DNA of 64,000 nucleotides, from NCBI GenBank assembly GCA_965644265.1, contig OZ286462.1:32798001-32862000 (forward strand). Direction: 5' to 3'. Both the position numbers and the translations under genes were made by a program. Origin of the DNA: Glycera tridactyla. Lineage: Eukaryota. This document shows positions 467 to 55,481 of the stretch, piece after piece (the stretch's first letter is position 1; every line of letters starts with the position of its first letter). The notes below the pieces were generated by a model. The model searched no databases. It was not told the DNA's origin and saw only the letters and a list, made by a program, of their open reading frames with translations.

Positions 467-3400
467 AGTCAAATGTCACAGAGGACACAGGACCAACGAC
501 AGAGACAATCACAGCAGGTCAGTATCAGATTAGCGACCGATAGTCTAACCCTGCTTACAACAACAGTCTGCCTGTCTGAATTCGTCAGTATCGATGATGA
601 GGCAACCATAGAGATGATCGAACTTCATTGCAGTGCCCTGATGTTGAGACAATGATATGATCACGCTTCTAATCTCCATGATTAGCCACAATGAGACCAA
701 CTGTCTGACTAACCTGATTAGCGAAGATGGTCTATCCCTGGTCGAATATGATAAGCATATTTGTCAGGTTCTAAGAACAAAAATGATAGAAGATACTTGT
801 GACAGTCGCATGTCAGCTAAAAGCCAATCTTTATTCAATGAAGTTCACCTGTGCCGACATCTCGAATATCAGTGATGCCAAGAGACCTGAGAAGAATGAT
901 ATATCTCTTACAAGTTCAGTGTAAAAGAGTATGTTGCATTTGATTCATTCATCAGAGTCAAATGTCACAGATCACACTGGACCGACAACAGAGGCAGTCA
1001 CAGTAGGTCAGTATCGTTTAACCCTGCTTACAACAATAGAATGTCTGAATTCTGCACTGCCAATGATGTGACAATCAAAGAGATGATCGAACTCCATTGC
1101 AATGCACTGACCGAGAGGCAATGATAAGACCATCCTCCTAATTTGCATGATTATACACAGTTGGACATTCTATCTGACTTCCACAATTACCAAAAATGGC
1201 CTCCTCTGAACAAACATGATGAGCATATTCTTCAGATTCTGATGAAAAACATGACGCGTAGACTTTTATTAGCCTACCTGTTGTCTTCCCAACTGACTTA
1301 ATATTCTTTATCGGACATAGACCAACCAAAACATATTCAGCAATTGAAAGTATGTTCATCATCTGCCCCACTAGGATACTTTCTTCTGATATCAGAGGTT
1401 GCTGTCTTGTTAATCTCTCCGATATTATCATATCACCACCACCATCAATTTTGACTTGTCCATGCTGCTCACTCTCAGCATATCTACCCTAACTATTATA
1501 TCAACACCACTAACCGCCACCATATACGCATTGTAATTCTTAGCCACTTTTGCCTTGTGTGAGACATGAATCAGAGAATATTGACGACACTCACTGACCA
1601 CATACCTTTCTTCCTGAAGGTACTGAACGATCAGGTTGTGGTCATGTCACTGACTGGCCAATTTACACTAGGAACACTGATTGATGATTTTCTAACCACG
1701 ATAGCATCAATGCAACATCAGACTCCAGCACTGTTGACGATTAGTCGATCAATAAAGATGCATGAACTGAGATGCAAGAAACCAACAATGAGTCAATTAG
1801 GGAGGAGGCCCCTCTATAGTGTAATAAGGCACACCCATTGATAGATGACTATGAGGATCATTGAGTGAATATGTATTACAGATCACGACATGAGGATAAA
1901 ATCTCTCTTCGAAAGAATATGGCTCATTCCACCAAAGGGATATTATGACATGAAGCTGAATCAGTATCTAAATTTAAGGCCGGATAATGTCGAGCTCTAT
2001 ACCATAGTGCTCATAATTTCAATGGTGACGATCATATGTTAGCCAAGAACCCATTGCATAGGTCATATGTGCTTGCAATACAAATTGGATATTAGCCGAA
2101 TACACGAACTTCACAAATGGGTGGAAGATGTAGGCTTCATCTGATACTATATGTCAATACTTGATGTGGGGAAGTATAATTTTTTCTCCATTTATCATAT
2201 GTGAATGTGACAGACGACACAGGACCGACTACAGAGGCAATCACAGCAGGTCAGTGTATCAGCTGATTAGCTGATAGCTTAACCTTGCTAACATCAAAAC
2301 TATATCTAAATCATGCACCGTCGAACATCAGTCAAACATATGAATGATTCAAAATCAATGCAGTGCACCAATGGCGAGACTACGCTGAGATCATCTACAT
2401 AATTTTCATGATAGATCATGAGTTGACAAGCCATTTGATTAGCCAGAATAACGGAATTATCATCCCTATGAACTCAGGGGAGATAGATGACATTTGCCAC
2501 ATTATTACTTCTCTCCAGGGACTGATCTTTCGGGTTATAAATATAGAATACTCCAGTGAAATCACAACACGATTGAACATCAGTCTGACAACAACTCACC
2601 TGCAGCAGCAATCAATCTCTGCTTTATGATATGGCGCACTTGTCTTTAGCCGAATGTTGATTCAATGTGTAAGATGTAATCACTAAAACTCAATATATGT
2701 TCTCAATGGTAGATGACACTGAGCTATATATATATTATTGTGCTGGTGACAGTCGCATGTCAACTAAAAGCCATTTTCTATTTAATGGAGTTTATGTGTT
2801 CCTACATCCTGGATATCTTTGATGCAAAGAGGCCATTAAAAATGGAAAGCTCTGGATATATCTCATACCCTTTTTCGAAGTTCAGTGTGAAAGTGTATTT
2901 TGAATTTCATCTATTCATCAGTGTCAAATGTCACAGAAGACACCGGACCAACGACAGAGACAGTCACAGCAGGTCAGTATCAGATTTCCGACTGATAATC
3001 TAACCCTGCTTACAATAACAGAATGTCTGAATTTCTTAGTATCGATGATAAAACAACCATAGAGATAATCGAAATTTATTGCAGTGTCCTGATTGTGAGA
3101 CAATGATGTGATCAAGCTTCTAATTTCCATGATCAGCCACAATTAGACCAACTGTCTGACTTACCTGATCAGCAAAGATGGTCTATCCCTGGTCAAATAT
3201 GATGAGCATATTCGTCAGGTTCTAATGAAATCCATGATAGGAGATGATACTAGTGACAGTCGCATGTCAGCTAGAAGCCATTTTTCATTAAATGGAGTTC
3301 ACCTGTGCCTACATCTTGGATATAAGTGATGCGATCAGACCTGATAAGAATAAAAAGATCTGGATATACCTCATACCATATTTCAAAGATCAGTGTCGAA

Positions 3401-6400
3401 GAGTATGTTTCATTTTATCCATCCATCAGAGTCAAATGTCACAGATCACACTGGACCGACAACAGAAGCAGTCACAGCAGGTCAGTATCAGATCACTGAC
3501 TGAGAGTTTAACCCTGCTTACAACAACAGGATGTCTGAATTCTGCACAGCAAATGATGAGACAATCACAGAGATGAACGAACTTTATTGCAATGCACTGA
3601 TCATGAGGCAGTGATAGGATCATCCTCCTAATTCGCATGATTATACACAATTAGACCATATATCTGACTTCCACGACTACCAAAGATGGCCTTCTCTGAT
3701 ATAGCATGATGAGCATTTTCTTCAGATTCTGATGAAAATATGACGTGACTATTCTTGTTATTTTCGTGACTATCTCTGACTGGCCTTTTATTAGCCTAAA
3801 TGTTGTCTTCCCAACTGACTCAATACTTTTTACCGGATATAGCTCAACCAAAACATATACTTAAGCAATAGGAAGTATGCTCATCATCTGACTCACTAGG
3901 ACACTTTGTTCTGATATCAGAGGAGGCTGTCTTGTTAATCTCTCTGATATCATCATATCATCACCGACATCAACATCATTTTTCACTTGTCCATGCAGCT
4001 CACTATCAGCATACCGTCTCTTGCCATCATATCAACACCACTAACCGTCACCATATACTCATTGTAACTCTCATCCCACTTTTGGCTTTGCGAGACATGA
4101 ATTTGAGAATATTGACGACACTCACTAACCAAATAACTATCTCTCTGAAGGTACTGAACTATCAGACTGTGGTCATGTCATTGACTGGCTGATTCACACT
4201 AGGAACACTGATTCATGATCTGTTGACCAAGGTAGCATCAATGCCACATCAGACTCCGGCACTGTCAAAGATTGGTCAATAAATACAGATGCAGAAACCA
4301 ATAGTCAGGCAATGAGGAGGGACGGTCCTCTATAGTGGAAAAAGGCACACTCATTGGCAGTTGGCTATAAGGATCATTGAGTGAGTATGGATTGCAAATC
4401 ACAACATGAGGATAACGTCTCTTCTCGAAAGAATATGGCTCATTCCACCAAAAGGGTCATTATCACACCAAGCCAAGTCAGTATCTCAATTCAAGGCCAG
4501 ATAATGTCAAGCTCCATACTGAAGTGTACATTGTTTCAATGGCTACGATCAAATGTCAGCCGAAAACACATTGCATAGGTCACATGTGCCTAAAATGCAA
4601 ATTGGGTATCAGCAGAATGCAGCAACTTTACATATGGAAGGAAGATGCAGGGTTTATCTGATACTATATGTCAATGGTGGATGTGGAGGAGAATAATTTT
4701 TTTCTCCATTTATCAGATGTGAATGTCACAGACAACACAGGACCAACTACAGAGGCAGTCACAGCAGGTCAGTGTATCAGCTGATTAGCTGATAGCTTAG
4801 CCTTGCTAACATAATTGAAACATCTGAATCATGCATCGTCAAAGATCAGTCAAACATAGGAATGATTCAAATTCATTGCAGGGCACCAATGCCAAGACTA
4901 CGATGAGATCATTTTCATAATTTCCATGATGAGTCATGATTTGACAATCCCTATGATTTCAAAGAATAACCAAATTAGCATGCCTATGAACACAGGTGAA
5001 ACACATACATTCTGTGTTCAGGAAAAGTTCTGACAAAAGCAACTCTCATAATTCTTCCAAATAATCATGACAACCCCATTTCCGATATTTAGAATCAGTC
5101 TTCTTTCGAATTTGATGACTGCCAATGCCAATACTACTACAGATCCACCGATTTGATATACATTCCAAAATATCTCCTTCCTCGAAAAACTTTCTTCGAA
5201 ATCTGAATGTCCGCCCATCATTCATGCCTTGATGATGCTTTGCCCTGCTTTCTCTGAATGATGACTCGTGATATCTCAGAATCTATATCATCATTTAAAT
5301 ATACCTTCTCTCCATGCATATTCATCACTGTTTTTATATTCACCCACTTCGCCATTACTACCAGTCACCATATACACATTGTAGTTCTTTTCCAATGTGG
5401 GTTTTCATTTCTGTGGGACATGAATTAGGGAAGATTGACAACATTTATCATGCTATTACTCTACAGGTTTTGATCTCTCAGGTAATATTATAGCATATAC
5501 CAGTGAAATCAAAACAGGATTGAGCATTAGTCTGACATCAGCTCAGCTGCAGCAGCAATCAATCTCTGCGTTGCAATATGGCACACATGTTTTCAGCAGA
5601 ATATTGAGTAAATGAGTAGGATGTATTCACTTGAAATCACTATATTGACTCAAAAGAAGATGACACTGAGCTCTATAAATTATTGTGCTGATGACAGCCG
5701 CATGCCAGATTCTAATGGAGAATATGCTAAGAGATGATACATGTGACATTCACATGTCAGCTAAAAGCCAATTCATATTCAATGGAGTTCATGTTTACCT
5801 ACATCTGAGATATCAGTGAAGGAAAGAGGATATAAAAAGTGAAAACGTCAGGATATATCTCATACCCTTTTTCAAAGTTCAGTGTGAAAGAGTATGTTTT
5901 CATTTTATTCATCCATCAGACTCAAATGTCACAGAGGACACAGGACCGACAACAGAGACAGTCACATCAGGTCAGTATCAGATTAATGACTGATAATCTA
6001 ACCCTGCTGACAGCAACATAATATCTGAATTCCTCAGTATCGATGATAAAATAATCATAGAGATGAATAACTTTATTGCAGTGCCCTGACGGTTGGACAA
6101 TTATATGATCAAGCTTCTGATTTCCATGATTAGCCACAGCTAGACCAACTGTCTGACTCACTTGATTAGCGAAGTAGGTCTATCTCTGGTCGAATATGAT
6201 GAGCATATTCATCAGATTCTGATGATGAACATGCTAAGAGATGATACATGTGACATTCACATGTCCGCTAAAAGCCAATTTATATTCAATGGAGTTCAGC
6301 GGTGCCTACATCTTGGATCTGAGTGATGCAAAGAGACCTGAAGAGAATGAACAGCTCAGCATGATCTCTTACCATATTTCAACGTTCAGTGTGAAAGAGT

Positions 6401-9400
6401 ATGTCTCATTTTATTCATCCATCAGAGTCAAATGTCACAGATCACACTGGACCGACAACAGAAGCAGTCACAGCAGGTCAGTATCAGATGACTGACTGAG
6501 AGTTTGACCCTGCTTACAACAACAGAATGTCTCAATTCTGCACTGCAAATGATAAGACAATCATAGAGATGATCGAACTTTATTGCAATGCACTGATCAT
6601 GAGGCAGTGATAAGATCATCCTCCTAATTCGCATGATTATACCCAATTAGACCATACATCTGACTTCCACGATTACCAAAGATGGCTTTCTCTGATATAG
6701 CATGATAAGCATTTACTTCATATTCTGATGAAAAATATGACGTGACTATTCTTGTCATTTTCGTGACCATCTCTGACTGGCCTTCTATTAGCCTAAATGT
6801 TGTCTTCCCAACTGACTCAATACTTTTTACCGGATATATATCAACCAAAACATATACTTCAGCAATTGGAAGTATGCTCATCATCTGCCTCACTAGGACA
6901 CTTTGTTCTGATATCAGAGGAGGCTGTCTTGTTAATCTCTCTGATATCATCATATCATCACCGACATCAACATCATTTTTCACTTGTCCATGCAGCTCAC
7001 TATCAGCATACCGTCTCTTGCCATCATATCAACACCACTAACCGTCACCATATACTCATTGTAACTCTCATCCCACTTTTGGCTTTGCGAGACATGAATT
7101 TGAGAATATTGACGACACTCACTAACCAAATAACTATCTCTCTGAAGGTACTGAACAATCAGACTGTGGTCATGTCATTGACTGGCTGATTCACACTAGG
7201 AACACTGATTCATGATCTGTTGACCAAGGTAGCATCAATGCCACATCAGACTCCGGCACTGTCAAAGATTGGTCAATAAATACAGATGCAGAAACCAATA
7301 GTCAGGCAATGAGGAGGGACGGTCCTCTATAGTGGAAAAAGGCACACTCATTGGCAGTTGGCTATAAGGATCATTGAGTGAGTATGGATTGCAAATCACA
7401 ACATGAGGATAACGTCTCTTCTCGAAAGAATATGGCTCATTCCACCAAAAGGGTCATTATCACACCAAGCCAAGTCAGTATCTCAATTCAAGGCCAGATA
7501 ATGTCAAGCTCCATACTGAAGTGTACATTGTTTCAATGGCTACGATCAAATGTCAGCCGAAAACACATTGCATAGGTCACATGTGCCTAAAATGCAAATT
7601 GGGTATCAGCAGAATGCAGCAACTTTACATATGGAAGGAAGATGCAGGGTTTATCTGATACTATATGTCAATGGTGGATGTGGAGGAGAATAATTTTTTT
7701 CTCCATTTATCAGATGTGAATGTCACAGACAACACAGGACCAACTACAGAGGCAGTCACAGCAGGTCAGTGTATCAGCTGATTAGCTGATAGCTTAGCCT
7801 TGCTAACATAATTGAAACATCTGAATCATGCATCGTCAAAGATCAGTCAAACATAGGAATGATTCAAATTCATTGCAGGGCACCAATGCCAAGACTACGA
7901 TGAGATCATTTTCATAATTTCCATGATGAGTCATGATTTGACAATCCCTATGATTCCAAAGAATAACCAAATTAGCATGCCTATGAACACAGGTGAAACA
8001 CATACATTCTGTGTTCAGGAAAAGTTCTGACAAAAGCAACTCTCATAATTCTTCCAAATAATCATGACAACCCCATTTCCGATATTTAGAATCAGTCTTC
8101 TTTCGAATTTGATGACTGCCAATGCCAATACTACTACAGATCCACCGATTTGATATACATTCCAAAATATCTCCTTCCTCGAAAAACTTTCTTCGAAATC
8201 TGAATGTCCGCCCATCATTCATGCCTCGATGATGCTTTGCTCTGCTTTCTCTGAATGATGACTCGTGATATCTCAGAATCTATATCATCATTTAAATATG
8301 CCTTCTCTCCATGCATATTCATCACTGTTTTTATATTCACCCACTTCGCCATTACTACCAGTCATCATATACACATTGTAGTTCTTTTCCAATGTGGGTT
8401 TTCATTTCTGTGGGACATGAATTAGGGAAGATTGGCAACATTTATCATGCTATTACTCTACAGGTTTTGATCTCTCAGGTAATATTATAGCATATACCAG
8501 TGAAATCAAAACAGGATTGAGCATTAGTCTGACATCAGCTCAGCTGCAGCAGCAATCAATCTCTGCGTTGCAATATGGCACACATGTTTTCAGCAGAATA
8601 TTGAGTAAATGAGTAGGATGTATCCACTTGAAATCACTATATTGACTCAAAAGAAGATGACACTGAGCTCTATAAATTATTGTGCTGATGACAGCCGCAT
8701 GCCAGATTCTAATGGAGAATATGCTAAGAGATGATACATGTGACATTCACATGTCAGCTAAAAGCCAATTCATATTCAATGGAGTTCATGTTTACCTACA
8801 TCTGAGATATCAGTGAAGGAAAGAGGATATAAAAAGTGAAAACGTCAGGATATATCTCATACCCTTTTTCAAAGTTCAGTGTGAAAGAGTATGTTTTCAT
8901 TTTATTCATCCATCAGACTCAAATGTCACAGAGGACACAGGACCGACAACAGAGACAGTCACATCAGGTCAGTATCAGATTAATGACTGATAATCTAACC
9001 CTGCTGACAGCAACATAATATCTGAATTCCTCAGTATCGATGATAAAATAATCATAGAGATGAATAAACTTTATTGCAGTGCCCTGACGGTTGGACAATT
9101 ATATGATCAAGCTTCTGATTTCCATGATTAGCCACAGCTAGACCAACTGTCTGACTTACTTGATTAGCGAAGTAGGTCTATCTCTGGTCGAATATGATGA
9201 GCATATTCATCAGATTCTAATGAAGAACATGCTAAGAGATGATACATGTGACATTCACATGTCCGCTAAAAGCCAATTTATATTCAATGGAGTTCAGCGA
9301 TGCCTACATCTTGGATCTGAGTGATGCAAAGAGACCTGAAGAGAATGAACAGCTCAGCATGATCTCTTACCATATTTCAACGTTCAGTGTGAAAGAGTAT

Positions 9401-12400
9401 GTTTCATTTTATTCATCCATCAGAGTCAAATGTCACAGATCACACTGGACCGACAACAGAAGCAGTCACAGCAGGTCAGTATCAGATGACCGACTGAGAG
9501 TTTGACCCTGCTTACAACAACTGAATGTCTCAATTCTGCACTGCAAATGATAAGACAATCATAGAGATGATCGAACTTTATTGCAATGCACTGATCATGA
9601 GGCAGTGATAAGATCATCCTCCTAATTCGCATGATTATACCCAATTAGACCATATATCTGACTTCCACGATTACCAAAGATGGCTTTCTCTGATATAGCA
9701 TGATGAGCATTCACTTCATATTCTGATGAAAAATATGACGTGACTATTCTTGTCATTTTCGTGACCATCTCTGACTGGCCTTCTATTAGCCTAAATGTTG
9801 TCTTCCCAACTGACTCAATACTTTTTACCGGATATATATCAACCAAAACATATACTTCAGCAATTGGAAGTATGCTCATCATCTGCCTCACTAGGACACT
9901 TTGTTCTGATATCAGAGGAGGCTGTCTTGTTAATCTCTCTGATATCATCATATCATCACCGACATCAACATCATTTTTCACTTGTCCATGCTGCTCACTA
10001 TCAGCATACCGTCTCTTGCCATCATATCAACACCACTAACCGTCACCATATACTCATTGTAACTCTCATCCCACTTTTGGCTCTGCAAGACATGAATTGG
10101 AGAATATTGACGACACTCACTAACCAAATAACTATTTCCCTGAAGGGACTGAACTATCAGACTCTGGACATGTCATTGATTGGCTGATTCACACTAGGAA
10201 CACTACTTCATGATCTGTTGACCAAGGTAGCATCTATACAACATCAGACTCCTGCACTGTCAAAGATTAGTCAATAAATACAGATGCAGAAACCAATAGT
10301 CAGGCAATGAGGAAGGACGGTCCTCTATAGTGAAAAAAGGCACACTCATTGGCAGTTGGCTATAAGGATCATTGAGTGAGTATGGATTGCAAATCACAAC
10401 ATGAGGATAACGTCTCTTCTCGAAAGAATATGGCTCATTCCACCAAAAGGGTCATTATCACACCAAGCCAAGTCAGTATCTCAATTCAAGGCCAGATAAT
10501 GTCAAGCTCTATACTGAAGTGTACATTGTTTCAATGGCTACGATCAAATGACAGCCGAAAACACATTGCATAGGTCACATGTGCCTAAAATGCAAATTGG
10601 GTATCAGCAGAATGCAGCAACTTTACATATGGATGGAAGATGTAGGGTTTATCTGATACTATATGTCAATGGTGGATGTGGAGGAGAATAATTTTTTTCT
10701 CCATTTATCAGATGTGAATGTCACAGACAACACAGGACCAACTACAGAGGCAGTCACAGCAGGTCAGTGTATCAGCTGATTAGCTGATAGCTTAGCCTTG
10801 CTAACATAATTGAAACATCTGAATCATGCATCGTCAAAGATCAGTCAAACATAGGAATGATTCAAATTCATTGCAGGGCACCAATGCCAAGACTACGATG
10901 AGATCATTTTCATAATTTCCATGATGAGTCATGATTTGACAATCCCTATGATTTCAAAGAATAACCAAATTAGCATGCCTATGAACACAGGTGAAACACA
11001 TACATTTTGTGTTCAGGAAAAGTTCTGACAAAAGCAACTCTCATAATTCTTCCAAATAATCATGACAACCCCATTTCCGATATTTAGAATCAGTCTTCTT
11101 TCGAATTTGATGACTGCCAATGCCAATACTACTACAGATCCACCGATTTGATATACATTCCAAAATATCTCCTTCCTCGAAAAACTTTCTTCGAAATCTG
11201 AATGTCCGCCCATCATTCATGCCTCGATGATGCTTTGCTCTGCTTTCTTTGAATGATGACTCGTGATATCTCAGAATCTATATCATCATTTAAATATGCC
11301 TTCTCTCCATGCATATTCATCACTGTTTTTATATTCACCCACTTCGCCATTACTACCAGTCATCATATACACATTGTAGTTCTTTTCCAATGTGGGTTTT
11401 CATTTCTGTGGGACATGAATCAGGGAAGATTGACAACATTTATCATGCTATTACTCTACAGGTTTTGATCTCTCAGGTAATATTATAGCATATACCAGTG
11501 AAATCGAAACAGGATTGAGCATTAGTCTGACATCAGCTCAGCTGCAGCAGCAATCAATCTCTGCGTTGCAATATGGCACACATGTTTTCAGCAGAATATT
11601 GAGTAAATGAGTAGGATGTATCCACTTGAAATCACTATATTGACTCAAAAGAAGATGACACTGAGCTCTATAAATTATTGTGCTGATGACAGCCGCATGC
11701 CAGATTCTAATGGAGAATATGCTAAGAGATGATACATGTGACATTCACATGTCAGCTAAAAGCCAATTCATATTCAATGGAGTTCATGTTTACCTACATC
11801 TGAGATATCAGTGAAGGAAAGAGGATATAAAAATTGAAAACGTCAGGATATATCTCATACCCTTTTTCAAAGTTCAGTGTGAAAGAGTATGTTTTCATTT
11901 TATTCATCCATCAGACTCAAATGTCACAGAGGACACAGGACCGACAACAGAGACAGTCACATCAGGTCAGTATCAGATTAATGACTGATAATCTAACCCT
12001 GCTGACAGCAACATAATATCTGAATTCCTCAGTATCGATGATAAGATAATCATAGAGATGAATGAACTTTATTGCAGTGCCCTGACGGTTGGACAATTAT
12101 ATGATCAAGCTTCTGATTTCCATGATTAGCCACAGCTAGACCAACTGTCTGACTTACTTGATTAGCGAAGTAGGTCTATCTCTGGTCGAATATGATGAGC
12201 ATATTCATCAGATTCTAATGAAGAACATGCTAAGAGATGATACATGTGACATTCACATGTCCGCTAAGAGCCAATTTATATTCAATGGAGTTCAGCGGTG
12301 CCTACATCTTGGATCTGAGTGATGCAAAGAGACCTGAAGAGAATGAACAGCTCAGCATGATCTCTTACCATATTTCAACGTTCAGTGTGAAAGAGTATGT

Positions 12401-36400: not shown

Positions 36401-39400
36401 CGGCTAAAGGTTCATCATCTAAGAGTCTAGGACAGTTAGTTCAGTTAGTTCTGGGAGGTCTACCTCCAAGTTGGATGATCAGGGGTTTAAGATCCCTTGT
36501 ATGTCTTCTAGCTCTTCTAAGATCAGAAATAGTAGTCTACCTCCTGAGGATGATGATAGTAAGATACAGGGAAATGGAGTGTCGGATCAACAAGCTCAGG
36601 GCTATGCCACAGCATTTCTTGTAACTTCTGCTTTATTACCAGGCCAGGAGCATATCCAGATTATTGCGGCTCCTGGATTGTCAGTGGAAGATGCAGAGTC
36701 CTTGGCGGTCCCTGGATCACACGGTATAGTTGATGCGTCACAAGCGAGAGATATCTTTGCCTCTTTTGGTAGGCAGATAGTTCGTGCTGAGGAAGCTGTG
36801 AGAGAGGGAGCTTCTCTCTCATAGAGGTTTGCAGTAAGGAAACCAGATCCGGCTAAACAGTTGATTACAGATGTAATTCATGAGTGTCTGTCAGGACCTA
36901 AACTCTCTTGGGAGTTGTTTGGTCAAGATTCAGACGAGTCGCAAGTAACCTTTCAGGTAACTTCCAATGAGGATAAGGTACAGTTGCCTGTACATAGTCA
37001 TAGTGTTTTTGTTCCAACTCAGGGTACGGTATTTCAGGTGGAATACAAACAAACAACTACTCCTTTAATGATGGATATAGAGTCTCAGGAAGTTATTTCT
37101 GATTCAGGGTCTGATCAACCAGGCTCAGTCCAGGAACCAGGTGGGGTTTCTGAGGGATCCCACAGTTTCTCCAGTTCCTTTGTTAGATCTGCAGGTTGTT
37201 TCTCCACAGCCTGATGCTTCTATTTTGGCTAAGGTAGAATCTCTCAGAGGGGAAGTCAGAATTCTGAGGGAAAGAGATATTAGAAAGAGGTCACATGATG
37301 AGAGTGTTTCTGTTGTGTCTGGAGAGTCAGAAGAGGAGGATAGACCTGATGTAAAGAGAAGGATGTCTTTCTTCAGAAGGTTTGCTTTGGAGACTTTGAC
37401 CAATATCATCAAAGATCCTGACCCCATTTCCAGAGAGGGCATCGGTATTTCATCAGGGAAATTTGACACTTTGTTTGCGGCTTGTGGACGAAGTAAGGAT
37501 ATTGATTTCCTTATTGATAGCTCTCTTCCAATTTCGCCTCTAGTTGGCAATGTTCAGAAGATCATGGACAGAGCTTTATATGGGAGGAAAGAGAATGAAA
37601 CTCCACAGTCTTGGGAGGTTCCGTTGGCAAAGGAGGGAGGACGGAAGCCCTTTCTAACACCTTCAAGAGCTCTCAACCGCGAATTTATGGCTGCAATTCG
37701 CGAGTTTATAAGCTCAGGCCCTCAGAGGATAGATCAAAGTTTGTAGTTACTTCACCACAAATTGATCCTGATTATTCGGAGCGTGGTAATGCATCAAAAT
37801 CTGATCTCAAGCCTAGTCAGCAGGAGGCTATTCTTAGGGATAGCCTTAAAGTGTTGTCCTATATAGATATTGCTCTCGCTACTGGTTTGACGGTAGCTGA
37901 GGGAGAGGATAAGTCTCCCGAAACTTGGGAGAAAGCTAGAGAGGCCATAGGGGAGGCCTACATGCTGTCGAACATGTAGCGATTATGGTCGGCAAGGTGG
38001 TGGGAAATTTAGAGCTAGCCAGAAGATCGGTGGCTCTAAAGTCAATGAAGTTTGACACTGATGTCAAAGCCAAATTACGGACTCTTCCGTTGGGCCAGGG
38101 ATTTCTGTTTGGGGGGGAAACTGGACGAAGCCAGTGATATAGCTGCTGAGAGGGCCCTCAAAAGAAGGAATATTGAGCTGGATTCTAGTAAGGCTAAATC
38201 TAAAGAGTCTAAGCCTTACAATTCCTCTATGTCTTCAACAAACTGGTGTGGAATGAAGAAGAAGAGAGGCTCTGGTGGAATGGGCCATGGTAGGCGTAGG
38301 GGTCAGAATGTGAACCAAGAGGCAGATCATCAGCCACAAATTCAGGTGACTGTTCCTGGTAAAGCAGCTCCTGAAGATTCTGGCAAGAGATTCTTCAAGA
38401 AGAAGGGTCGCGAAAGAGCTTCTCAGCTCTATGGGGACGCGCATCACTCCTGCAATGATTGTGGGAGCGAGGTTGTCTGCATTTGCAGGAGAATGACAGA
38501 ATCTAACGACAAACAGATTTATCTTGAACATTGTTAGATCAGGCCTGTCTTGGGTTTTCAAGGAGAATCCAATATTATCTCCAACTTGGCATCCCTCTGC
38601 TCTTTCGAAGAAGGGCCATTTGAAGAGGGAGGGTGTGCTGGAAGAGGTTCAATGTATGCTAGACAAGGTGGCGATTGTTCCTATTTATCAGGACGGGTCG
38701 GCAAGGTTTTACAGCAGGACATTTCTGGTAACAAAGGCAACAGGGGGATATCAACCCATTATAAATTTGAAACATCTGGATCAACACATATACAATCAGA
38801 GATTGGAAATGGAGACTTCTCGGTCGATAGTGCAAGCCGTCTCTTCGGGCAATTGGACAGTATCCATCAACCTCAAGGACGCTTACATTCATGTCCCCAT
38901 CAATCCGGAGTTCCAGAAGTACCTGTGGTTTGCCCTGTCGTCCACACAGGCTTTTCAGTTCAGGGCCCTGCCGTTCAGCTTGTGCACTTCCTCTTGCATC
39001 TTTACAATGCTAGTAAGGGAAGTGGTGCAACATTTACATGCCAGAGGGATGAAGTTTCATTTTCACCTGGACGACTGGCTGCTCAGACACCAGAACCCAG
39101 AGAACTTAGCATCCCACCCTTAAGTACACTCTCGAGTTTGCATGCAAACTAGGTTGGATCATAAACGACAAGAAATCGGACTTGGTTCCCAGTCAGCATT
39201 TGTCTATCTGGGGATCGAGTTCGACACAGAATCGTTCTTGGTCTTTCCCACTCTGTCCAGAGTAGAGAGGATGGAATGTTGGGTTCGGCTATTTCGACGG
39301 GTTCTCGAGCAGCCAGCTTGTTCACTTCTGAAATTACTCAGCCATATGTCAAGTCTCTCAGACACAGTTCATCTAGGCTGATTACATATGCGCCCCATTC

Positions 39401-42400
39401 AGATGGCTCTTTTGAGCCAGTGGAAGCCATTCTCAGACCATCCAGACCAGCTAGTCAGCCTACCTGTGGAGGTCCAGACCAATTTGTTATGGTGGGCCTC
39501 CAGAGAGAATACAAGGAAAGGAGTTCCCTTATCTGTCCTGGAGCCCTCAGTCAACCTTCTGACGGATGCTTGGTTGGAAGGCTGGGGAGCTCATCTGGTG
39601 GTGGGAGACCAGAGAATTCAGATTTCTGGGATATGGTCTCAGAGTCACCGAGGTCATTCAATCAACAGTCTAGAGTTAGAGACAGTTCTTCTAGCTCTTC
39701 AAGGCTTCTCAGAACATCTCCTGGGACAAGTGGTTCTTCTTTCAGACAACGCCACCACAAAATCATGTATTCAAAATCAGGGGGGACAGATTTGAGTCTT
39801 CTATGGGGTCTGACATGGCAGATATTCTCTCTGACAGAGAGCCTCAACGTGTTACTGAGAGCTCGACATATTCCAGGAAAACACAATGTTCTGGCTGACG
39901 CATAATCTCGTCAGGAGCCAGTTCAAACAGAGTGGGAACTACTGCAATCAGTTTTCCAGGGAGTAGTAGAGCATTTCAACCTGTCTCCAACAGTCATTCT
40001 CATGGCGACTCCTCACAACAGCAAGCTTCCGGTGTTCATGTGCCCGTTTCCGGACCCATCTGCTCTCGAGGTGGACGCGCTTTCCATGTCTTGGAAGGGT
40101 CTTGGGACGGCATATGTTTACCCACCAATAGCTTTAGTGAGGGATGTGGTCAACAAACTGAGAGGACTGGAGCTGGTTCTGATTTGCATAGCTCCCTGAT
40201 GGCCAAACCAATCTTGGTTCCCAGACCTCCTGGAGTTGTCCACAGATCTTCCAGTGGAGCTGCCTCTCCCTCGGGACCTGTTAATTCAGAAGATCAGAGG
40301 AAAGGTATTCAACGACTGGAAACCCCAAGTGCTCTCTCTGCACGCTTGGTGTCTGTGTGGTCAGCCCTCAGCCGCCAGGGCTTTTCAGCAAAGGTGGTTG
40401 AGTGGATCTCTGGATCTACCAGACCATCCACTACCAAGGTCTATGATACCAGATGGTCTGGATGGTAGGCTTGGTGTTCTACCCACAGGGTGGATAAAGA
40501 GCATCCCTCTATGGCGCAGTTAGGAGATTTCTTTATTGAATCATGGGAATCTGGTCTCGCTCTTGAGACAGTAAAGGGCTACCGTTCAGCCATAGGTTCA
40601 GTTTTATCCCGTTTTGGAATTAAAATTTCGGATTCTAGTGAGATTACTGATCTTTTCAGAAAATTTTCACTTGAATGGCCTGTCACTCCTAAAGTTGTCC
40701 CTCGCCAGATAGATCGTCTCTGATTATTGAGATTCAGGCATCATCAGGAGTTCCTGATATTTCGGAAGATGATTCGAGTCTTTTTATGTAGATCATCTAC
40801 ACTTCAGCTTTAGAAGAAGATTGTTCTTCGACCCCTCTTCTATCTCTCAGAAAGAGATGAGGGCTGCTGTTCTATTCAAATGGATTATGGATGTTGTTAA
40901 GGGCGCATACCTCAGGGCTGATAGAGAGGAAGAGTTAATGGATCATATGCCTGCTCACAAACTCAGGGCTCTCTCTGCATCCTGGAAAATGTTCAATAGG
41001 TCTTGTTCTGTTGGTGATATTATGCGCTCAGCTTCCTGGCGTTCTGGACGTACATTTGAAAATTATTATTTACGGGATATGTGTGGGCAGGCTATGGATT
41101 TGTATTCACTGGGTCCTATTGTGGCTGGACAAGCAGTGGTCTCTCCGCCTGCCCTCACTGATTAGTTTTCTTTCTCTCTAACCCACCATCCGTGGTATAT
41201 GCGTATGCATAATTTGATGGAGAAACCAGTTATTTGTTAACCCCCCCAGGTTCGCTTGCTAACTTGGGAGTTAACACTTTACCTGTTTCTCCATGAAATG
41301 GTATTTTCCCTCCTATCCTCCCCTGTGTGTGTATATAGTGTATATTGTTGTTATTTACGAGTTGCGCATGCACGCGTTTGTTTGAGTGGCGAGTGTAGTT
41401 CCACCGGTTTGCACGGGGAGCGCTGTGATAACGGATGGAGGGATGGTTACATCTGAGAAAAAGATTTTTAATTGTATTAAAAGTTCGAAATGGGCGATTC
41501 AATGAGAATGAATGCATAATTTGATGGAGAAACAGGTAAATGTTAACTCCCAGGTTAGCAAGCAAACCTGGGGGGAATTAGTTAATAAATACAGATGCAG
41601 AAACCAATAGTCAGGCAATGAGGAGGGACCGTCCTCTATAGTGGGAAAAGGCACACTCATTGGAAGTTGACTATAAGGATCATTGAGTGAGTATGGATTG
41701 CAAATCACAACATGAGGATAACGACTCTTCATGAAAGAATATGGCTCGTTCCACCAAAAGGGTCATTATCACACCAAGCCAAGTCAGTATCTCAATTCGA
41801 GGCAAGATGATGTCAAGCTCTATACTGAAGTGTACATTATTTCAATGGCTACGATCAAATGTTAGCCGAAACACATTGCATAGGTCATATGTGCCTGGAA
41901 TGTAAATAGGGTATCAGCAGAATGCAGCAACTTTACATATGGATGGAAGATGTAGGGTTTATCTGATACTGTATGTCAATGGTCGATGTCGAGGAGTATA
42001 ATTTTTTCTCCATTTATCAGATGTGAATGTCACAGACGACACAGGACCAACTACAGAGGCAGTCACAGCAGGTCAGTGTATCAGCTGATCAGCTGATAGC
42101 TTAGCCTTGCTAACATAATTGAACCATCTGAATCATGCACCGTCAAAGATCAGTCAAATAATCATGACAACCTCATCTCTGATATTTGAATTAGTCTTCT
42201 TTCGGATTTGATGACTGCCAATTCAATACTACTACAGATCCACCGATTTGATATACATTCCGAAATGTCTCCTTCCTCGAAAAACTTTCTCCGAAATCTG
42301 AATGTCCGCCCATCATTCACGCCTTGATGATGCTTTATTTTGCTTTCTCTGAATGGTGACTCTTGATGTCTCGGAATCTGTATTATCATTTAAATATGCC

Positions 42401-45400
42401 TTCTCTCAATGCATATTCATCACTGTTTTTATATCCACCCACTTCGCCATTACTACCAGTCATCATATACACATTGTAGTCCTTTTCCAATGTTGGTTTT
42501 CATTTCTGTGGGACATGAATTAGGGAAGATTGACAACATTTATCATGCTATTACTCTACAGGTTTTGATCTCTCAGGTAATATCATAGCATATACCAGTG
42601 AAATCACAACAGGATTGAGCATTAGTCTGACATCAGCTCAGCTGCAGCAGCAATCAATCTCTGCGTTGTAATATGGCACACATGTTTTCAGCAGAATATT
42701 GAGTAAATGAGTAGGATGTATCCACTTGAAATCACTATATTGACTCAAAAGAAGATGACACTGAGCTCTAAATATTATTGTGCTGGTGACAGCCGCATGC
42801 CAGATTCTAATGAAGAATATGCTAAGAGATGATACATGTGACATTCACATATCAGCTAAAAGCAAATTTATTTTCAATGGAGTTCATGTTTACCTACATC
42901 TGAGATATCAGTGAAGGAAAGAGGATATAAAAATTGAGAACCTCAGGACATATCTCATACCCTTTTTCGAAGTTCAGTGTGAAAGAGTATGTTTTCATTT
43001 TATTCATTCATCAGAGTCAAATGTCACAGAGGACACAGGACCGACAACAGAGACAGTCACAGCAGGTCAGTATCAGATAAATGACTGATAATCTAACCCT
43101 GCTGACAGCAACATGATATCTGAATTCCTCAGTATCGATGGTATAAAAATCATAGAGATGAATGAACCTTATTGCAGTGCCCTGACGGTTAGACAATTAT
43201 ATGATCAAGCTTCTAATTTCCATGATTAGCCACAGCTAGACCAACTGTCTGACTCACTTGATTAGCGAAGTAGGTCTATCTCTGGTCGAATATGATGAGC
43301 ATATTCGTCAGATTCTAATGAAGAACATGGTAAGGGATGATACATGTGACATTCACATGTCCGCTAAAAGCCAATTCATATTCAATGGAGCTCACCGGTG
43401 CCTACATCTTGGATATAAGTGATGCAAAGAGACCTGAAGAGAATGAACAGCTCAGCATAATCTCTTACCATATTTCAACGTTCAGTGTGAAAGAGTATGT
43501 TTCATTTTATTCATCCATCAGAGTCAAATGTCACAGATCACACTGGACCGACAACAGAAGCAGTCACAGCAGGTCAGTATCAGATGACTGACTGAGAGTT
43601 TGACCCTGCTTACAACAACAGAATGTCTGAATTCTGCACAGCAAATGATAAGACAATCATAGAGATGATCGAACTTTATTGCCATGCACCGATCATGAGG
43701 CAGTGATAAGATCATCCTCCTAATTCGCATGATTATACCCAATTAGACCATATATCTGACTTCCACAATTACCAAAGATGGCTTTCTCTGATATAGCATG
43801 ATGAGCATTTACTTCAGATTCTGATGAAAAATATGACGTGACTATTTTCGTCATTTTCGTGACTATCTCTGACTGGCCTTCCATTAGCCTAGATGTTGTC
43901 TTCCCAACTGACTCAATACTTTTTACCGGATATAGCTTAACCAAAACATATACTTCAGCAATAGGAAGTATGCTCATCATCTGCCTCACTAGGACACTTT
44001 GTTCTGATATCAGAGGAGGCTGTCTTGTTAATCTCTCTGATATCATCATATCATTACCAACATCAACATCATTTTTCACTTGTCCATGCTGCTCACTATC
44101 AGCATACCGTCTCTTGCCATCATATCAACACCACTAACCGTCACCATATACTCATTGTAACTCTCATCCCACTTTTGGCTTTGCGAGACATGAATTGGAG
44201 AATATTGACGACACTCACTAACCAAATAACTATTTCCCTGAAGGTACTGAACTATCAGACTGTGGTCATGTCATTGACTGGCTGATTCACACTAGGAACA
44301 CTGGTTCATGATCTGTTGACCAAGGTAGCATCAATGCCACATCAGACTCCTGCACTGTCAACGATTAGTCAATAAATACAGATGCAGAAACCAATAGTCA
44401 GGCAATGAGGAAGGTCGGTCCTGATTTCATCTTAATGGTGTAACATTTTGGTAGACTGCATGTCTGCATTATGAAGTCTGCATTCCCAGCTAAATTGCTT
44501 CATTAGCCATAGATGCTTATTCATCATGACGAAGTAACTAACGTTTGCCCTGACAGGATTTTCAACTCTAATAGATGTACCTCTCGATATACTTTTTGAA
44601 ATACAGAAAAACCTACGTCTCAGCAAAGGAGAAGATAAGCAACTTGAGAAGACAGAGATTCTGTATGATAATCAATGATATCCGCAGTACCAATATAGAA
44701 TCAGAGGTTTTTCGCAGTACTCGAGCACTAATTTTGATGAGTATGGTATCATATCCATGTTACATTGTCTTTTACTGTGTTTACTATCTCTGCTATCAGA
44801 TATAGGCATCAGATGGCAGAACATAATCATGTATGATGCAAAAAACCGCATCTGTTGGTGAATGTATGTGAAAATTCAATAGTTCCCATTTGGCCACCAG
44901 GCGGCTCTGGGTGCTGGGTTCCATATCTGAAATTGCTTGTTGGGGGTCAACGATCATTCATGCCAAGTTTCATGCTTTTTACCCAAAGTGCATGGTTTTT
45001 CCCTTATCTGCCCCACTATAAGTATATTTGGCAATGAAGTTACATGCCAAAACTAGGAAAAGTGGAGTAGCTGAAACTTTGCATTTCTTGTGTGCAGACT
45101 TTTTCAACAGATGTGGCGAATGCAGTCTGCACTAAATATGAGACCGAGGGTATTGTCTGTGCTCCAAAACTGTTTGTTTGTTCTCACAACTGCAGGATTC
45201 GACAAATTTTTCTTCATCTGTTCTTCGTTTAGGTGGAGCGAAATTTTCATCTGTCCTCCCTGTCATTCTCACCTTCCCTCCTGCGTATAATCATAGGCTG
45301 AATAACTGTTAGGTACCTGCCATCGGGCAGGCAGACTCATAAAATCACCTGCCCTATCAATCAATCCACATGTCTGTGCCAGTAGGGCAACCCTTATCGT

Positions 45401-48400
45401 AGAGCCCTGATATTGACTATGATCCTAGCTCAAGCAACTGACTCATCCCACGGTACAGGCATATCCTTGATGCAGCATCCATCAGCAGATTACTGAGGTG
45501 GGCCACAGTGTGTGCCAGTGATTGATGGCACAGTCCGGGAGCAAGAAACTATCAAACACTTATATTTTCAACACATATTGTCCAACTGATGGCGATGTAT
45601 TCGAGGCATTTCAGCAGTTGTCAAATCACATGAACATGCTGAACAACGTGAGAACCAAGGACACATTGGTACTCAGTGACCTCAATATAGACTATTTGAA
45701 AAGTTCCCCCAATAGATTACTTCTGTCTTTTCTTTAAAAACCATGGGACTCATTCAGATTATCTCCAGACCCACAAGATTATCACTGACAACAAGCACGC
45801 TATTGGATGTTATAAGGGTTAACTGTCCTGACCTCCATCAAATTCCTATTGTTTTCTCCCCTGGTCTCAGTGACTATGAAATGGTTATCACATCAAGAAA
45901 GGGACAGAAAACGTGCAAAGACAAAAAGACCATCAAAGCAGGGACTTCCAGAAACTATACAACCATATACTACAGGCAAGCGCTTGAGGCTACACTTAGC
46001 AAATTTGACTAGCAACCCTTCGAACCTACACTATTTTCATGGACACTCTCACATAGGTATTTGACGCCAAAGCACCATACGAGGTGATGTCAGTCAGAAT
46101 TGTAAAAGTCCCTTGGCGGACTGAGGCCTATATTTCCCTCATAAATGACTATAGGGAAGCCGATGATCAAGCCAGGATTTCAATAGTAGGAGATGATATA
46201 GAGAAAGCCCACCAGCTCATAAATGTTAGAAACAATGCAGCATGCCAACTGAAGAAGTCATCTTTCCTAGGCAAGTTTGAGAAGTACAAGACGGATAGCA
46301 AGAAATCATGGAAAACTTTCTCTCAGCTGCTGTCAAATTCCTCGAAGCATACCAGCATTGAGAGTTCAGAAATGGCCAATATTTTCAATAACTTTTCAGT
46401 GGAGATTGGGCGATACTCTCAGTAGCCAAATTACTGGCCCATCCCTCCCACATGAGCCAGAAATTCCAAAAGCCAATGAATCTTTTGATTTATCGCCCCA
46501 ACATTACCTGAGATCACTGCATATCTGAGAAAAATGCCACTGGCGAAAGCCACAGGTTTCCTGGGAATTTATGCAAGTAACACCACTCTTCAAGGAAGGT
46601 GACCGCTCAGATCCTAATTGCCCTGGGTCTCAAGGTTGATAAAAAAAAGTCTGTACATGCACAGCTTTACAAATATTTCAACAAAAATGAACTTCTAAAC
46701 TCATGTCAGTCTGGATTTCGATCGGGAAGTCACAAATAGTATGATAAATGAATCAGAAAATGGAAAACTCACAGTGGTTGCTTTTTTGGATCTTTAAATG
46801 GCTTTTAAAACGGTCAACCACACCAGACTGCTATCAAAACTGTCAAAATATGAGGTGTCAGAATGTGCTGTTGAGTGGTTCAAAAACTTTCTAGTGGGTA
46901 GACAACAAACAACTGTGATGAATCTGAAAATATCTGAACAGAAAGAAGTTACATCAAGGGATATGCGGGTATGCCCATCTTTTTTTCTCTTTTCGCTTAG
47001 TGTTTGTATGCTACCTGCATGTGTGACTTGTACTCAAAAAGGGAGATACAGTCTTCGGACTACCCCTTCAGAATTGAGATAAAATCATCTATGATTCACA
47101 ATAGTAATAAGAATAATAATGATGACAAATATAATGATAATAACAATGATAACAATATCACATTGATATCATAAAATGAATATGCTTAGATCGGTTGATA
47201 ATAAGTGTTTGTGGCATCATGATGTGGTTTAATCATCTTTCATTTTTCAATTACCACAGTGGCATAAGACCACGTTGACCGAATTCTCTGGCGAAAATGT
47301 CCACATAGCATCGTCAGTCATCAAAACAGTTATATCACATAATTGTTACTACTGAAAGATCCTTCCAGAAGTCAGGTGTTCAACATTGAATTGGAGGCCA
47401 AATGACATAATGATTATTGTTGTGTTGTAGATGTGTGTAACGTGACCAATGTGCAGGTATGCCAGACTATGGCTTTGCAAGTCCTGTTTGACATATTCCT
47501 GTCACCAGGAAACCCCAACCAATGCGAGTGAGTAACACAATGAAGATGCAGTGACTACCACTCACATCACCTATTCTTTTGAATGTACGGTTATTTTCAA
47601 CGACCCATATAAAGCATTTGCAATAAATTGTGACAAACTACCTTCAGGCAGATACTGCTTTCTTTGCTGCATATGCAGCTTAGTGTGTGTGCCAGGCTGG
47701 AATTCTGGATATTTAGTTGAGATGTTGGTTGACATGTATCCATTTGCTCCTGCTATGCACTACTTGGTCAAGATGGCTGTCAAACCTGAGTGAGGTCAGG
47801 CATGATATGATACTCATTTTTGTCATATTTTTCAACCACCATTGTGTATCATGTGCATGTATTCAATGTCTATATCATGTCATCAATTTCTGTTGAAAAG
47901 GTATTTAGCACATTCTTTGACAAGTTTGGAGACTGCACATCTGCTTTGCGATGATGAAGATGTCTTACTCTTTGCCATGCTTGGGCAGTCTGTCTATGCA
48001 AGCCTCGAGTGCGTGAATGGAAGTGAGTATATCTGCTCATAGTTTTCTGGCATTGTATCATTTGCCTCACTTTTATTCACTAGTTGCTAGCTTGTCTCAT
48101 GTACATCACAATACTCGAAAATGAATCGATCTCCACCAAGGATGCTCAGCCTTACGTTGTCACTAGCATCATCACCGTCACATCGTTTTCTTCCTCCTTC
48201 CTCTAGCTCTCCTCTCCCCGCTATCAATACTAGTGTTGTTGTCGTCATCACTGTCATCATCATATTCGACGACATCAATTATGTTGTTTTCATTATCGGC
48301 AGTGAACTGCCTTTGTAATTGTCGGTACCATCGTCGATAAATTGCCATCGACATCGCATTGTCCACCTAATCAATTTCTTTGCAATCTTCTTGCAGCAAT

Positions 48401-50466: not shown

Positions 50467-50508
<42 letters not shown>

Positions 50509-50906
50509 GTTTTTGTCGCCTCGTCAGACTTCATATATATATATATATGTGTGTGTGTCTGTGAGTGAGTGTGTGTGTGGGGGGGGGGTGTATATGTGAA
50601 TTGTTCGGGAAACCAAATCCTCTTATCATTGTAATTCAGTAGCAATACCAAGATCCCATCCCCAAATTTCATTCATATAGTGTGCAAAGGTGTAAATTGT
50701 TTTTTTCTTTTCCTTTTTTCCCTAACCACAACTGTCAGAACCAATATTATGATTATCGTTATTATCAATATTATCATTATCAGTAGTTTTAATGTCATAC
50801 TTATTAGTTGCCTTGGTTCCGGCTGTGTGAAACAAGGTATACCAATTTTTATATGTCCGTATTGCGAATCATGATCACTACAAGTAAACTATGAGTTTCA
50901 AAGTTT

Positions 50907-50978
<72 letters not shown>

Positions 50979-55447: not shown

Positions 55448-55481
<34 letters not shown>

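What the first reader, a model, noticed from the sequence alone, without database searches (positions are those of the whole stretch)
467..47527. All stalk exons are symmetric phase 1-1: a built-in combinatorial splicing and length-polymorphism system
Seen: every 51-nt and 15-nt exon is a multiple of 3 with phase 1 at both ends, and the first Cys exon (47431) starts in phase 1. Any subset can be skipped, and any unit gained or lost, without a frameshift. Established analogues: Schistosoma micro-exon genes and SmPoMuc polymorphic mucins diversify through short symmetric exons. Inference: stalk length and glycan number may vary by splicing and by allele, as expected for a variable surface, adhesion or host-interaction protein.
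Basis: inference. Interest (0 to 1): 0.8.

Follow-up and report, generated by a model that had tools for sequence, protein, structure and literature searches.

The report
Symmetric 51-base exon array, mucin-like stalk
A 3-kb "satellite" in this invertebrate genome is very probably a run of at least 38 tiny in-frame exons coding a sugar-coated threonine-rich stalk; skipping or copying any of them keeps the reading frame, but that follows from how such arrays arise, and nothing here shows that it is used.

Summary
The core observation holds. There are 38 segments of 51 nt on the + strand, three per 2,998-bp tandem unit. All 38 have a GTCAGT donor and 37 have an AG acceptor. Only the phase-1 frame is open in all 38. 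The first Cys exon (47431-47527) is also open only in phase 1. All 38 exons end in G, so any exon-to-exon joint gives Asp, Glu, Val or Gly and never a stop.

The 15-nt exons are not confirmed. Two recurrent AG-15 nt-GT candidates exist. One has decent splice signals, but neither is more conserved than the surrounding intron.

An exon array made by tandem duplication must be symmetric to stay open. Class 1-1 modules are the rule in animal extracellular proteins, and tropoelastin is the textbook 1:1 cassette gene.

- Near-identical neighbouring units (99.6-99.8%) make copy-number change plausible.
- Splicing variation could not be tested. No RNA run was listed, and no database protein matched the one 40-residue Cys-exon query that I searched.

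The scan has already found the same design on other DNA of this genome (s1-302880, s1-340384, s1-302869). Verdict: a new member of a known kind, of low interest.

The parts
467..43572 (+). Array of 38 putative 51-nt coding exons (types A, B and C), three per 2,998-bp unit. It is interrupted by an insertion at 34484-41576. The array runs off the 5' end of the window.
   Evidence: The exon starts are listed in the observation check. Introns are 454-457 nt (A to B), 1,236-1,238 nt (B to C) and 1,152 nt (C to A).
8917..11914 (+). Representative core unit (u03), 2,998 bp.
   Evidence: it is 99.6-99.7% identical to its neighbours u04 and u05.
8917..8967 (+). Type A exon. Phase-1 peptide DSNVTEDTGPTTETVTS.
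9424..9474 (+). Type B exon. Phase-1 peptide ESNVTDHTGPTTEAVTA.
10712..10762 (+). Type C exon. Phase-1 peptide DVNVTDNTGPTTEAVTA. It has stops in phase 0.
2199..2249 (+). Type C exon whose acceptor is AT instead of AG. It is probably skipped, or used from the internal AG at exon positions 14-15, which would give a 36-nt exon that is still in frame.
43522..43572 (+). Last stalk exon (type B). Its final G plus the AT at 47431 gives GAT.
   Evidence: Array homology ends at 44422.
8464..8478 (+). 15-nt candidate b (GFDLS in phase 1). Identical copies start at 5467, 8464, 11462, 14460, 17458, 20456, 23452, 26448, 29447, 32446 and 42562. A diverged copy lies at 2519-2533, and the copy at 67-81 lacks AG.
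   Evidence: It has plausible splice signals but no excess conservation. Unverified.
7286..7300 (+). 15-nt candidate a (DAETN in phase 1). It has 13 copies, including 34261, 41595 and 44382. The pyrimidine tract is poor and the donor is weak.
   Evidence: Unverified and less likely.
7148..7162 (+). Homologue of candidate b in the B intron. It is followed by AC, not GT, in the core units, and by GT only in the old unit at 1619-1633.
47431..47527 (+). First Cys exon, 97 nt, running from phase 1 to phase 2.
   Evidence: Only this frame is open across the exon.
47901..48022 (+). Second exon of Cys module 1, 122 nt, running from phase 2 to phase 1. The module as a whole is therefore 1-1 (219 nt).
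48397..48505 (+). First exon of Cys module 2, 109 nt, running from phase 1 to phase 2.
34484..41576 (+). 7,093-bp insertion in a B-to-C intron (the DIRS element of note s1-328267). It is flanked by a 241-bp duplication of array intron at 34243-34483 and 41577-41817.

Best explanation
The 51-nt segments are real coding cassette exons of one + strand gene of an invertebrate extracellular protein. Each exon codes one 17-residue acidic repeat that is rich in threonine and carries an N-V-T sequon. Together the exons form a mucin-like stalk of at least 646 residues. This stalk is spliced in phase 1 onto a series of two-exon Cys modules that are also 1-1.

The array grew by unequal crossing-over of a 3-kb exon-plus-intron unit. 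That unit is itself an old triplication of one exon-intron unit. Only symmetric 3n exons survive such duplication with an open frame, so the uniform 1-1 phase is a by-product of the array's origin.

It does make exon loss, exon skipping and unit gain or loss frame-neutral. The likeliest real variation is allelic copy number. By default all exons are included, with at most stochastic skipping.

Shown here: the anatomy, the frame, the conservation pattern and the duplication history. Inferred: expression, glycosylation and any variation between alleles or transcripts.
For: - All 38 donors are GTCAGT and 37 of 38 acceptors are AG.
- Only phase 1 is open in all 38 exons. Five independent point variants create stops in the other two frames and none does so in phase 1.
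- The same phase is demanded independently by the Cys exon at 47431, and the chain of the next two exons is consistent.
- Exons are better conserved than their flanks in old comparisons, and they have no indels. Old unit against consensus is 92.8% versus 82.6% (p = 5e-4). Exon A against exon C and B against C are 80%, versus 49-62% for the flanks (p = 5e-4).
- Differences among the A, B and C consensus sequences fall mostly at third codon positions: 7 at position three, 4 at position one and 1 at position two.
- The composition is 31% Thr and 42.6% Ser+Thr+Pro, with 37 sequons in 646 residues.
- Core units are 97.5-99.8% identical and edge units 83-96%, the usual picture of unequal crossing-over.
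- Rfam finds nothing, and the unit holds no ORF longer than 130 aa and none over a 51-nt exon in the phase-1 frame, so no non-coding RNA or transposon explanation is supported.
- Class 1-1 symmetry is the general rule for such modules (PMC8001218).
Against: - There is no RNA evidence, because no run was listed.
- No protein in 1.84 billion representatives matches the 40-residue Cys exon b. The gene model is therefore unsupported by any annotation or transcript.
- Among the young core units the exons vary as much as the introns (6/153 versus 128/2,842 variable sites).
- A 7-kb retroelement in the same orientation sits in one intron, and transposon debris fills the last stalk intron.
- The 5' end of the gene lies outside the window.
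- The codon-position bias is not significant on its own.
Confidence: 0.65

Rival explanations
1. The symmetric exons are used as a regulated combinatorial system: different transcripts and alleles carry different subsets and numbers of repeats. This would give a variable surface or host-interaction protein, as with SmPoMuc.
For: - Every joint is frame-neutral and stop-free.
- Units have duplicated recently.
- One exon with a dead acceptor is tolerated.
- An in-frame internal AG lies at exon positions 14-15 in 38/38 exons. Its use would remove the sequon.
- SmPoMuc provides a precedent (PMC2576457).
Against: - All exons have the same donor and near-identical acceptors, so nothing singles out any exon as alternative.
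- Symmetry is expected from duplication alone (PMC8001218).
- No RNA and no second haplotype was available.
- In SmPoMuc the splicing variants described lie in the C-terminal part.
- An earlier follow-up on a similar array in this genome (s1-302869) also found no sign of combinatorial splicing.
Confidence: 0.15
2. The array is a decaying or silent relic. It would be a former exon array that now behaves as a 3-kb satellite and is not made into protein.
For: - No transcript or protein was found.
- The young core units show no exon-versus-intron difference.
- There are retroelement insertions.
- One acceptor is lost.
Against: - There are no stops and no indels in 38 exons in the coding frame, while stops have arisen in both other frames.
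- 37 of 38 splice-site pairs are intact.
- The downstream Cys exons are intact and in phase.
Confidence: 0.15
3. The units are a non-coding host gene with short non-coding exons whose introns carry small RNAs, like snoRNA cluster hosts.
For: The unit resembles tandem host-gene units of about 3 kb with very short exons (from general knowledge).
Against: - Rfam gives no hit at gathering threshold on either strand.
- The exons, not the introns, are the conserved part.
- One frame is kept open and matches the downstream coding exon.
Confidence: 0.03

Closest known systems
SmPoMuc polymorphic mucins of Schistosoma mansoni (PMC2576457)
   Same: The repeat region of the gene is a tandem array of genomic units, each holding a very short in-frame exon that codes one peptide repeat. 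In SmPoMuc the units are about 1 kb with a 27-bp exon, and there are about 20 repeats in one gene. The product is mucin-like, and repeat number varies.
   Different: Here the unit is 3 kb and holds three paralogous 51-nt exons. The repeat has no tested sequence relation to SmPoMuc. No gene family, no strain or individual polymorphism and no transcript data are known. The C-terminal part here consists of Cys modules.
Tropoelastin (ELN) gene design (PMC12554196)
   Same: All splice sites are in phase 1:1, so that one or several exons can be removed cassette-like without changing the reading frame downstream.
   Different: In tropoelastin alternative splicing is documented. Its exons alternate between hydrophobic and cross-linking types and do not lie in a homogenised tandem DNA array. 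There is no sequence relation.
Class 1-1 symmetric modules of metazoan extracellular proteins (exon-shuffling rule, PMC8001218)
   Same: The modules have 3n length and are flanked by phase-1 introns. They can be duplicated, inserted or skipped in frame. The two-exon Cys modules that follow the stalk here are also 1-1.
   Different: The rule was drawn from folded domains such as EGF, Ig and FN3. Here the module is a 17-residue segment that is probably disordered.
Schistosoma micro-exon genes (MEGs) (bioRxiv 10.1101/2023.06.21.545858)
   Same: Exons are short and symmetric (3-81 bp in MEGs) and are separated by much longer introns.
   Different: According to that preprint's abstract, MEGs are a schistosome gene superfamily encoding secreted proteins and built from short exons. 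Here the exons are tandem copies of one exon, in a long stalk that is joined to Cys modules. Not a member.
Other micro-exon stalk arrays in this same genome (scan notes s1-302880, s1-340384, s1-302869)
   Same: They are homogenised exon-plus-intron arrays with one acidic Ser/Thr-rich repeat per symmetric exon. One lies only 3.8 kb beyond this window's end.
   Different: They have other exon lengths (24, 30/36 and 57 nt) and other repeat peptides. I did not examine them myself.

Membership tests
Symmetric class 1-1 cassette exons | Exon length is a multiple of 3. | tested here: met
   All 38 segments are 51 nt.
Symmetric class 1-1 cassette exons | The same intron phase (1) at both ends. | tested here: met
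   Only phase 1 is open in all 38 exons. The Cys exon at 47431 is open only in phase 1. This is inferred from frames, not from RNA.
Symmetric class 1-1 cassette exons | Exons are actually skipped or included in different transcripts. | not testable with these tools
   No RNA run was listed, so read laying could not be used.
SmPoMuc-type polymorphic mucin | The repeat region is a tandem array of genomic units, each carrying a short repeat exon. | tested here: met
   There are about 13 units of 2,998 bp with three 51-nt exons each. SmPoMuc has units of about 1 kb with a 27-bp exon.
SmPoMuc-type polymorphic mucin | Sequence homology to SmPoMuc proteins. | not tested
   No SmPoMuc sequence was fetched. 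The 17-residue repeat is too short for the search tools.
SmPoMuc-type polymorphic mucin | A multigene family with polymorphism in repeat number between individuals and strains. | not testable with these tools
   Only one window of one assembly is available.
Schistosoma micro-exon genes (MEG) | Short symmetric exons (3-81 bp) separated by long introns. | tested here: met
   Exons are 51 nt and introns 454-1,238 nt.
Schistosoma micro-exon genes (MEG) | A schistosome-specific secreted-protein gene superfamily of micro-exon genes (preprint abstract), not a tandem exon-repeat array attached to other modules. | tested here: not met
   The exons here are tandem copies of a single exon. They code a stalk of at least 646 residues, which is followed by at least nine Cys modules.
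Mucin-like (PTS) domain | Tandem repeats rich in Thr, Ser and Pro. | tested here: met
   Thr is 31% and Ser+Thr+Pro 42.6% of 646 residues. There are 37 N-x-S/T sequons.
Mucin-like (PTS) domain | Dense O-glycosylation of the product. | not testable with these tools
   This needs protein chemistry.
Mucin-like (PTS) domain | Vertebrate mucins only: the repeats lie in one large exon (PMC13345508 abstract). | tested here: not met
   Here there is one repeat per 51-nt exon.

The most novel reading that the evidence does not exclude
A free-living invertebrate uses a homogenised array of symmetric 51-nt exons as a regulated length and glycan dial. Exon subsets, or the in-frame internal acceptor that removes the N-V-T sequon, would be chosen per tissue or individual. 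On top of this, allelic unit number would vary, so the stalk would become an individually variable surface protein of the SmPoMuc kind outside parasites.
Probability: 0.12. Interest if true: 0.5.

Novelty: new member of a known kind. Interest (0 to 1): 0.25.

Why it matters
If expressed, the locus adds a clean example of a mucin-like stalk built one repeat per micro-exon. The array is homogenised at the level of the whole exon-plus-intron unit, and it sits in a genome where this design recurs. Such loci are easily masked as satellites and missed by gene finders, so recognising them improves annotation. The specific claim of a built-in diversification system would matter only if transcripts or alleles were shown to differ. 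The symmetry itself is expected and already well described.

Tried and rejected
- RNA evidence: the look-up of sequencing runs on 42000-51999 listed no run, so read laying could not be used.
- Annotated or transcript-derived protein: phmmer of the 40-residue Cys exon b against 1.84 billion representatives gave 0 hits.
- The word search (search for homologous proteins) was not used. Its length window (0.55-1.75 times the query) cannot reach a long protein from a single exon. A spliced protein has no reference, and I did not type one.
- Pfam on ten open pieces of the Cys region gave nothing at or near any gathering score.
- Rfam on the whole window gave nothing, so the small-RNA host-gene idea was rejected.
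- A transposon or other ORF explanation for the unit was rejected, because the unit holds only short ORFs.
- I tested whether the 15-nt candidates are conservation peaks between old paralogous introns or in the old unit. They are not.
- I looked for intronic inverted repeats that could drive looping-out of exons. Only one 14-nt match was found. It is near-palindromic and is not kept in the diverged units, so it was not pursued.
- The exon-versus-intron test among the young core units has no power.
Full report
**What is there**

The window from 1 to about 44.4 kb is a tandem array with a dominant period of 2,998 bp. It is visible already as a periodic composition profile. A fuzzy search with the core of the proposed exon finds 38 copies, all on the + strand.

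Each copy is a 51-nt segment, three per unit. In phase 1 the three types read:
- type A: DSNVTEDTGPTTETVTS
- type B: ESNVTDHTGPTTEAVTA
- type C: DVNVTDNTGPTTEAVTA

Introns are 454-457 nt (A to B), 1,236-1,238 nt (B to C) and 1,152 nt (C to A). The array runs off the 5' end of the window, so 38 is a minimum.

**Check of the observation**

- All 38 segments are followed by GTCAGT, and 37 of 38 are preceded by AG after a pyrimidine-rich tract. The exception is 2199, which has AT.
- In phase 1 none of the 38 has a stop. In phase 0, 16 have one (all twelve type C exons plus 956, 21414, 24410 and 33406). In phase 2, five have one (18418, 19706, 22702, 25698, 31696). Several of these stops are point variants of single copies. 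Mutations have therefore made stops in the two unused frames but never in phase 1.
- The first Cys exon starts at 47431 behind a strong pyrimidine tract. It is open only when its first two bases complete a codon, because the other two frames meet TGA or TAA within 15 nt (sequence).
- The following exons chain without conflict. 47431-47527 runs from phase 1 to phase 2, 47901-48022 from phase 2 to phase 1, and 48397-48505 from phase 1 to phase 2. The Cys modules are therefore 1-1 as two-exon units.
- All 38 stalk exons end in G and begin with AG, AT, AC or TG. Every conceivable joint reads GAG, GAT, GAC or GTG, and the joint to the Cys exon reads GAT.

No joint can create a stop or change any other residue.

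**Are the 51-nt segments exons rather than satellite?**

The copies are not independent, so I compared old paralogues.
- The oldest unit (467-2921) is 82.6% identical to the core consensus in its introns, with about 570 of the 2,845 consensus intron positions left unaligned. In the three exons it is 92.8% identical (142/153), with no indel (Fisher p = 5e-4).
- Between the sub-repeats of one unit, exon identity is 86% (A/B) and 80% (A/C, B/C). The 250-nt flanks are 72-73% and 49-62% identical, and indels occur only in the flanks (p = 0.04, 5e-4 and 5e-4).
- The twelve columns that differ among the three type consensus sequences fall 7, 4 and 1 on codon positions three, one and two of the phase-1 frame. 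This is suggestive but not significant on its own.
- The N-V-T sequon is kept in 37 of 38 exons.
- The joined product is 646 residues with 31% Thr, 14% Val, 20% Asp+Glu and 42.6% Ser+Thr+Pro.
- Rfam finds nothing in the window. The unit holds no ORF longer than 130 aa and none over a 51-nt exon in the phase-1 frame.

I take the exon reading as well supported in silico. It is not proven, because no RNA run was listed for this stretch. A phmmer search of all 1.84 billion representatives with the 40-residue second Cys exon also returned nothing. These blanks say only that no transcript or annotation was available for the two stretches I queried.

**The 15-nt exons**

Only two AG|15 nt|GT strings outside the 51-nt exons recur once per unit or more.
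- Candidate b has 11 identical copies, for example 8464-8478, and reads GFDLS in phase 1. It has a reasonable acceptor (ctattactctacag) and donor (CAG|gtaata).
- Candidate a has 13 copies, for example 7286-7300, and reads DAETN. It has a purine-rich acceptor region and a weak donor.
- In the old unit, candidate b keeps AG, 15 nt and GT but differs at 5 of 15 bases, which is more than the intron average.
- In the partial unit at the window start its acceptor is AT.
- Its homologue in the B intron (7148-7162) has AC in place of GT in all core units. The region is no conservation peak between the two old introns: 10/15 against 57% overall.

The 15-nt exons remain candidates. If b is used it is also 1-1, and its joints are equally neutral.

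**History of the array**

- Core units are 97.5-99.8% identical. The closest pairs are neighbours: u03, u04 and u05 at 99.6-99.8%, and u07 and u08 at 99.7%.
- Edge units are 83-96% identical. This is the usual signature of unequal crossing-over that homogenises the centre.
- Among these young units the exons vary as much as the introns (6/153 versus 128/2,842 sites). Homogenisation therefore acts on the whole unit.
- The array has tolerated a lost acceptor (2199), a 543-bp shorter unit (u00), a 204-bp intron deletion (near 42155) and a 7,093-bp retroelement (34484-41576) flanked by a 241-bp duplication of array intron.

This makes allelic copy-number change plausible but does not show it.

**Interpretation**

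The uniform 1-1 phase is what any exon array made by tandem duplication must have if the gene stays open.
- It is the general rule for modules of animal extracellular proteins. Only symmetric modules can be duplicated or shuffled in frame, and class 1-1 predominates (PMC8001218).
- The same review notes that such 3n modules are well suited to exon skipping.
- Tropoelastin is the standard case. [quoted passage not shown]
- The closest architectural analogue is SmPoMuc. Its repeat region consists of genomic units of about 1 kb, each with a 27-bp exon (PMC2576457). In that paper the alternative and aberrant splicing events are described for the C-terminal part, and intermingled repeat types are taken to suggest ectopic recombination.
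- Here all donors are identical and all acceptors but one are near-identical, so no exon is marked as alternative.

**Relation to earlier scan notes**

The scan has already met this design on other DNA of the same genome: s1-302880 (said to be expressed), s1-340384 (3.8 kb beyond this window), s1-302869 and others. I did not test those.

**Verdict**

This is a new member of a known kind, of low interest, unless transcripts or alleles are shown to differ.

Noticed in passing
window 34243-34483 and 41577-41817, around the insertion 34484-41576: The retroelement insertion is bracketed by a 241-bp direct duplication of array intron sequence (227/240 identical). The array is therefore neither deleted nor shifted there. 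The boundaries given in note s1-328267 (34247-41811) include these duplicated flanks. The element's ORFs are all 161-280 aa, so it looks broken.
   Followed up: partly
window 7714-7727 versus 6249-6262 and 8739-8752 (the same in other core units): The first 14 nt of every type C exon are perfectly complementary to an intronic 14-mer about 165 nt upstream of exons B and A. The string is nearly palindromic, and the match drops to 11/14 in the diverged units. It could be chance or a splicing-related pairing.
   Followed up: partly
exon positions 14-15 of all 38 stalk exons (for example 8930-8931): An internal AG lies 15 nt into every exon. Used as an acceptor it would give a 36-nt exon, still in frame, that lacks the N-V-T sequon. 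It is the only usable acceptor for the exon at 2199.
   Followed up: no
window 47431-63270: At least nine exons end with a Cys codon plus two bases before GT (ends near 47527, 48505, 51486, 52737, 53795, 54545, 58517, 62636 and 63270). This fits a series of diverged two-exon Cys modules. There is no Pfam match, and the one exon searched has no relative.
   Followed up: partly
window 44423-47430: The last stalk intron (3.9 kb) holds sequence unrelated to the array. By eye, the open stretches at about 45500-47000 look like a broken retroelement. It was not searched.
   Followed up: no
window 61548-62290: A 372-bp unit is present in two copies at 98% identity. It includes CA-rich microsatellites and an acidic Asp-rich open stretch, and it lies inside the Cys-module region.
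   Followed up: no
window 52966-53137, 53441-53587, 53923-54095, 60572-60720, 63287-63439: Five runs of N lie in the Cys-module region. I left them as they are. They limit any gene model there.
   Followed up: no
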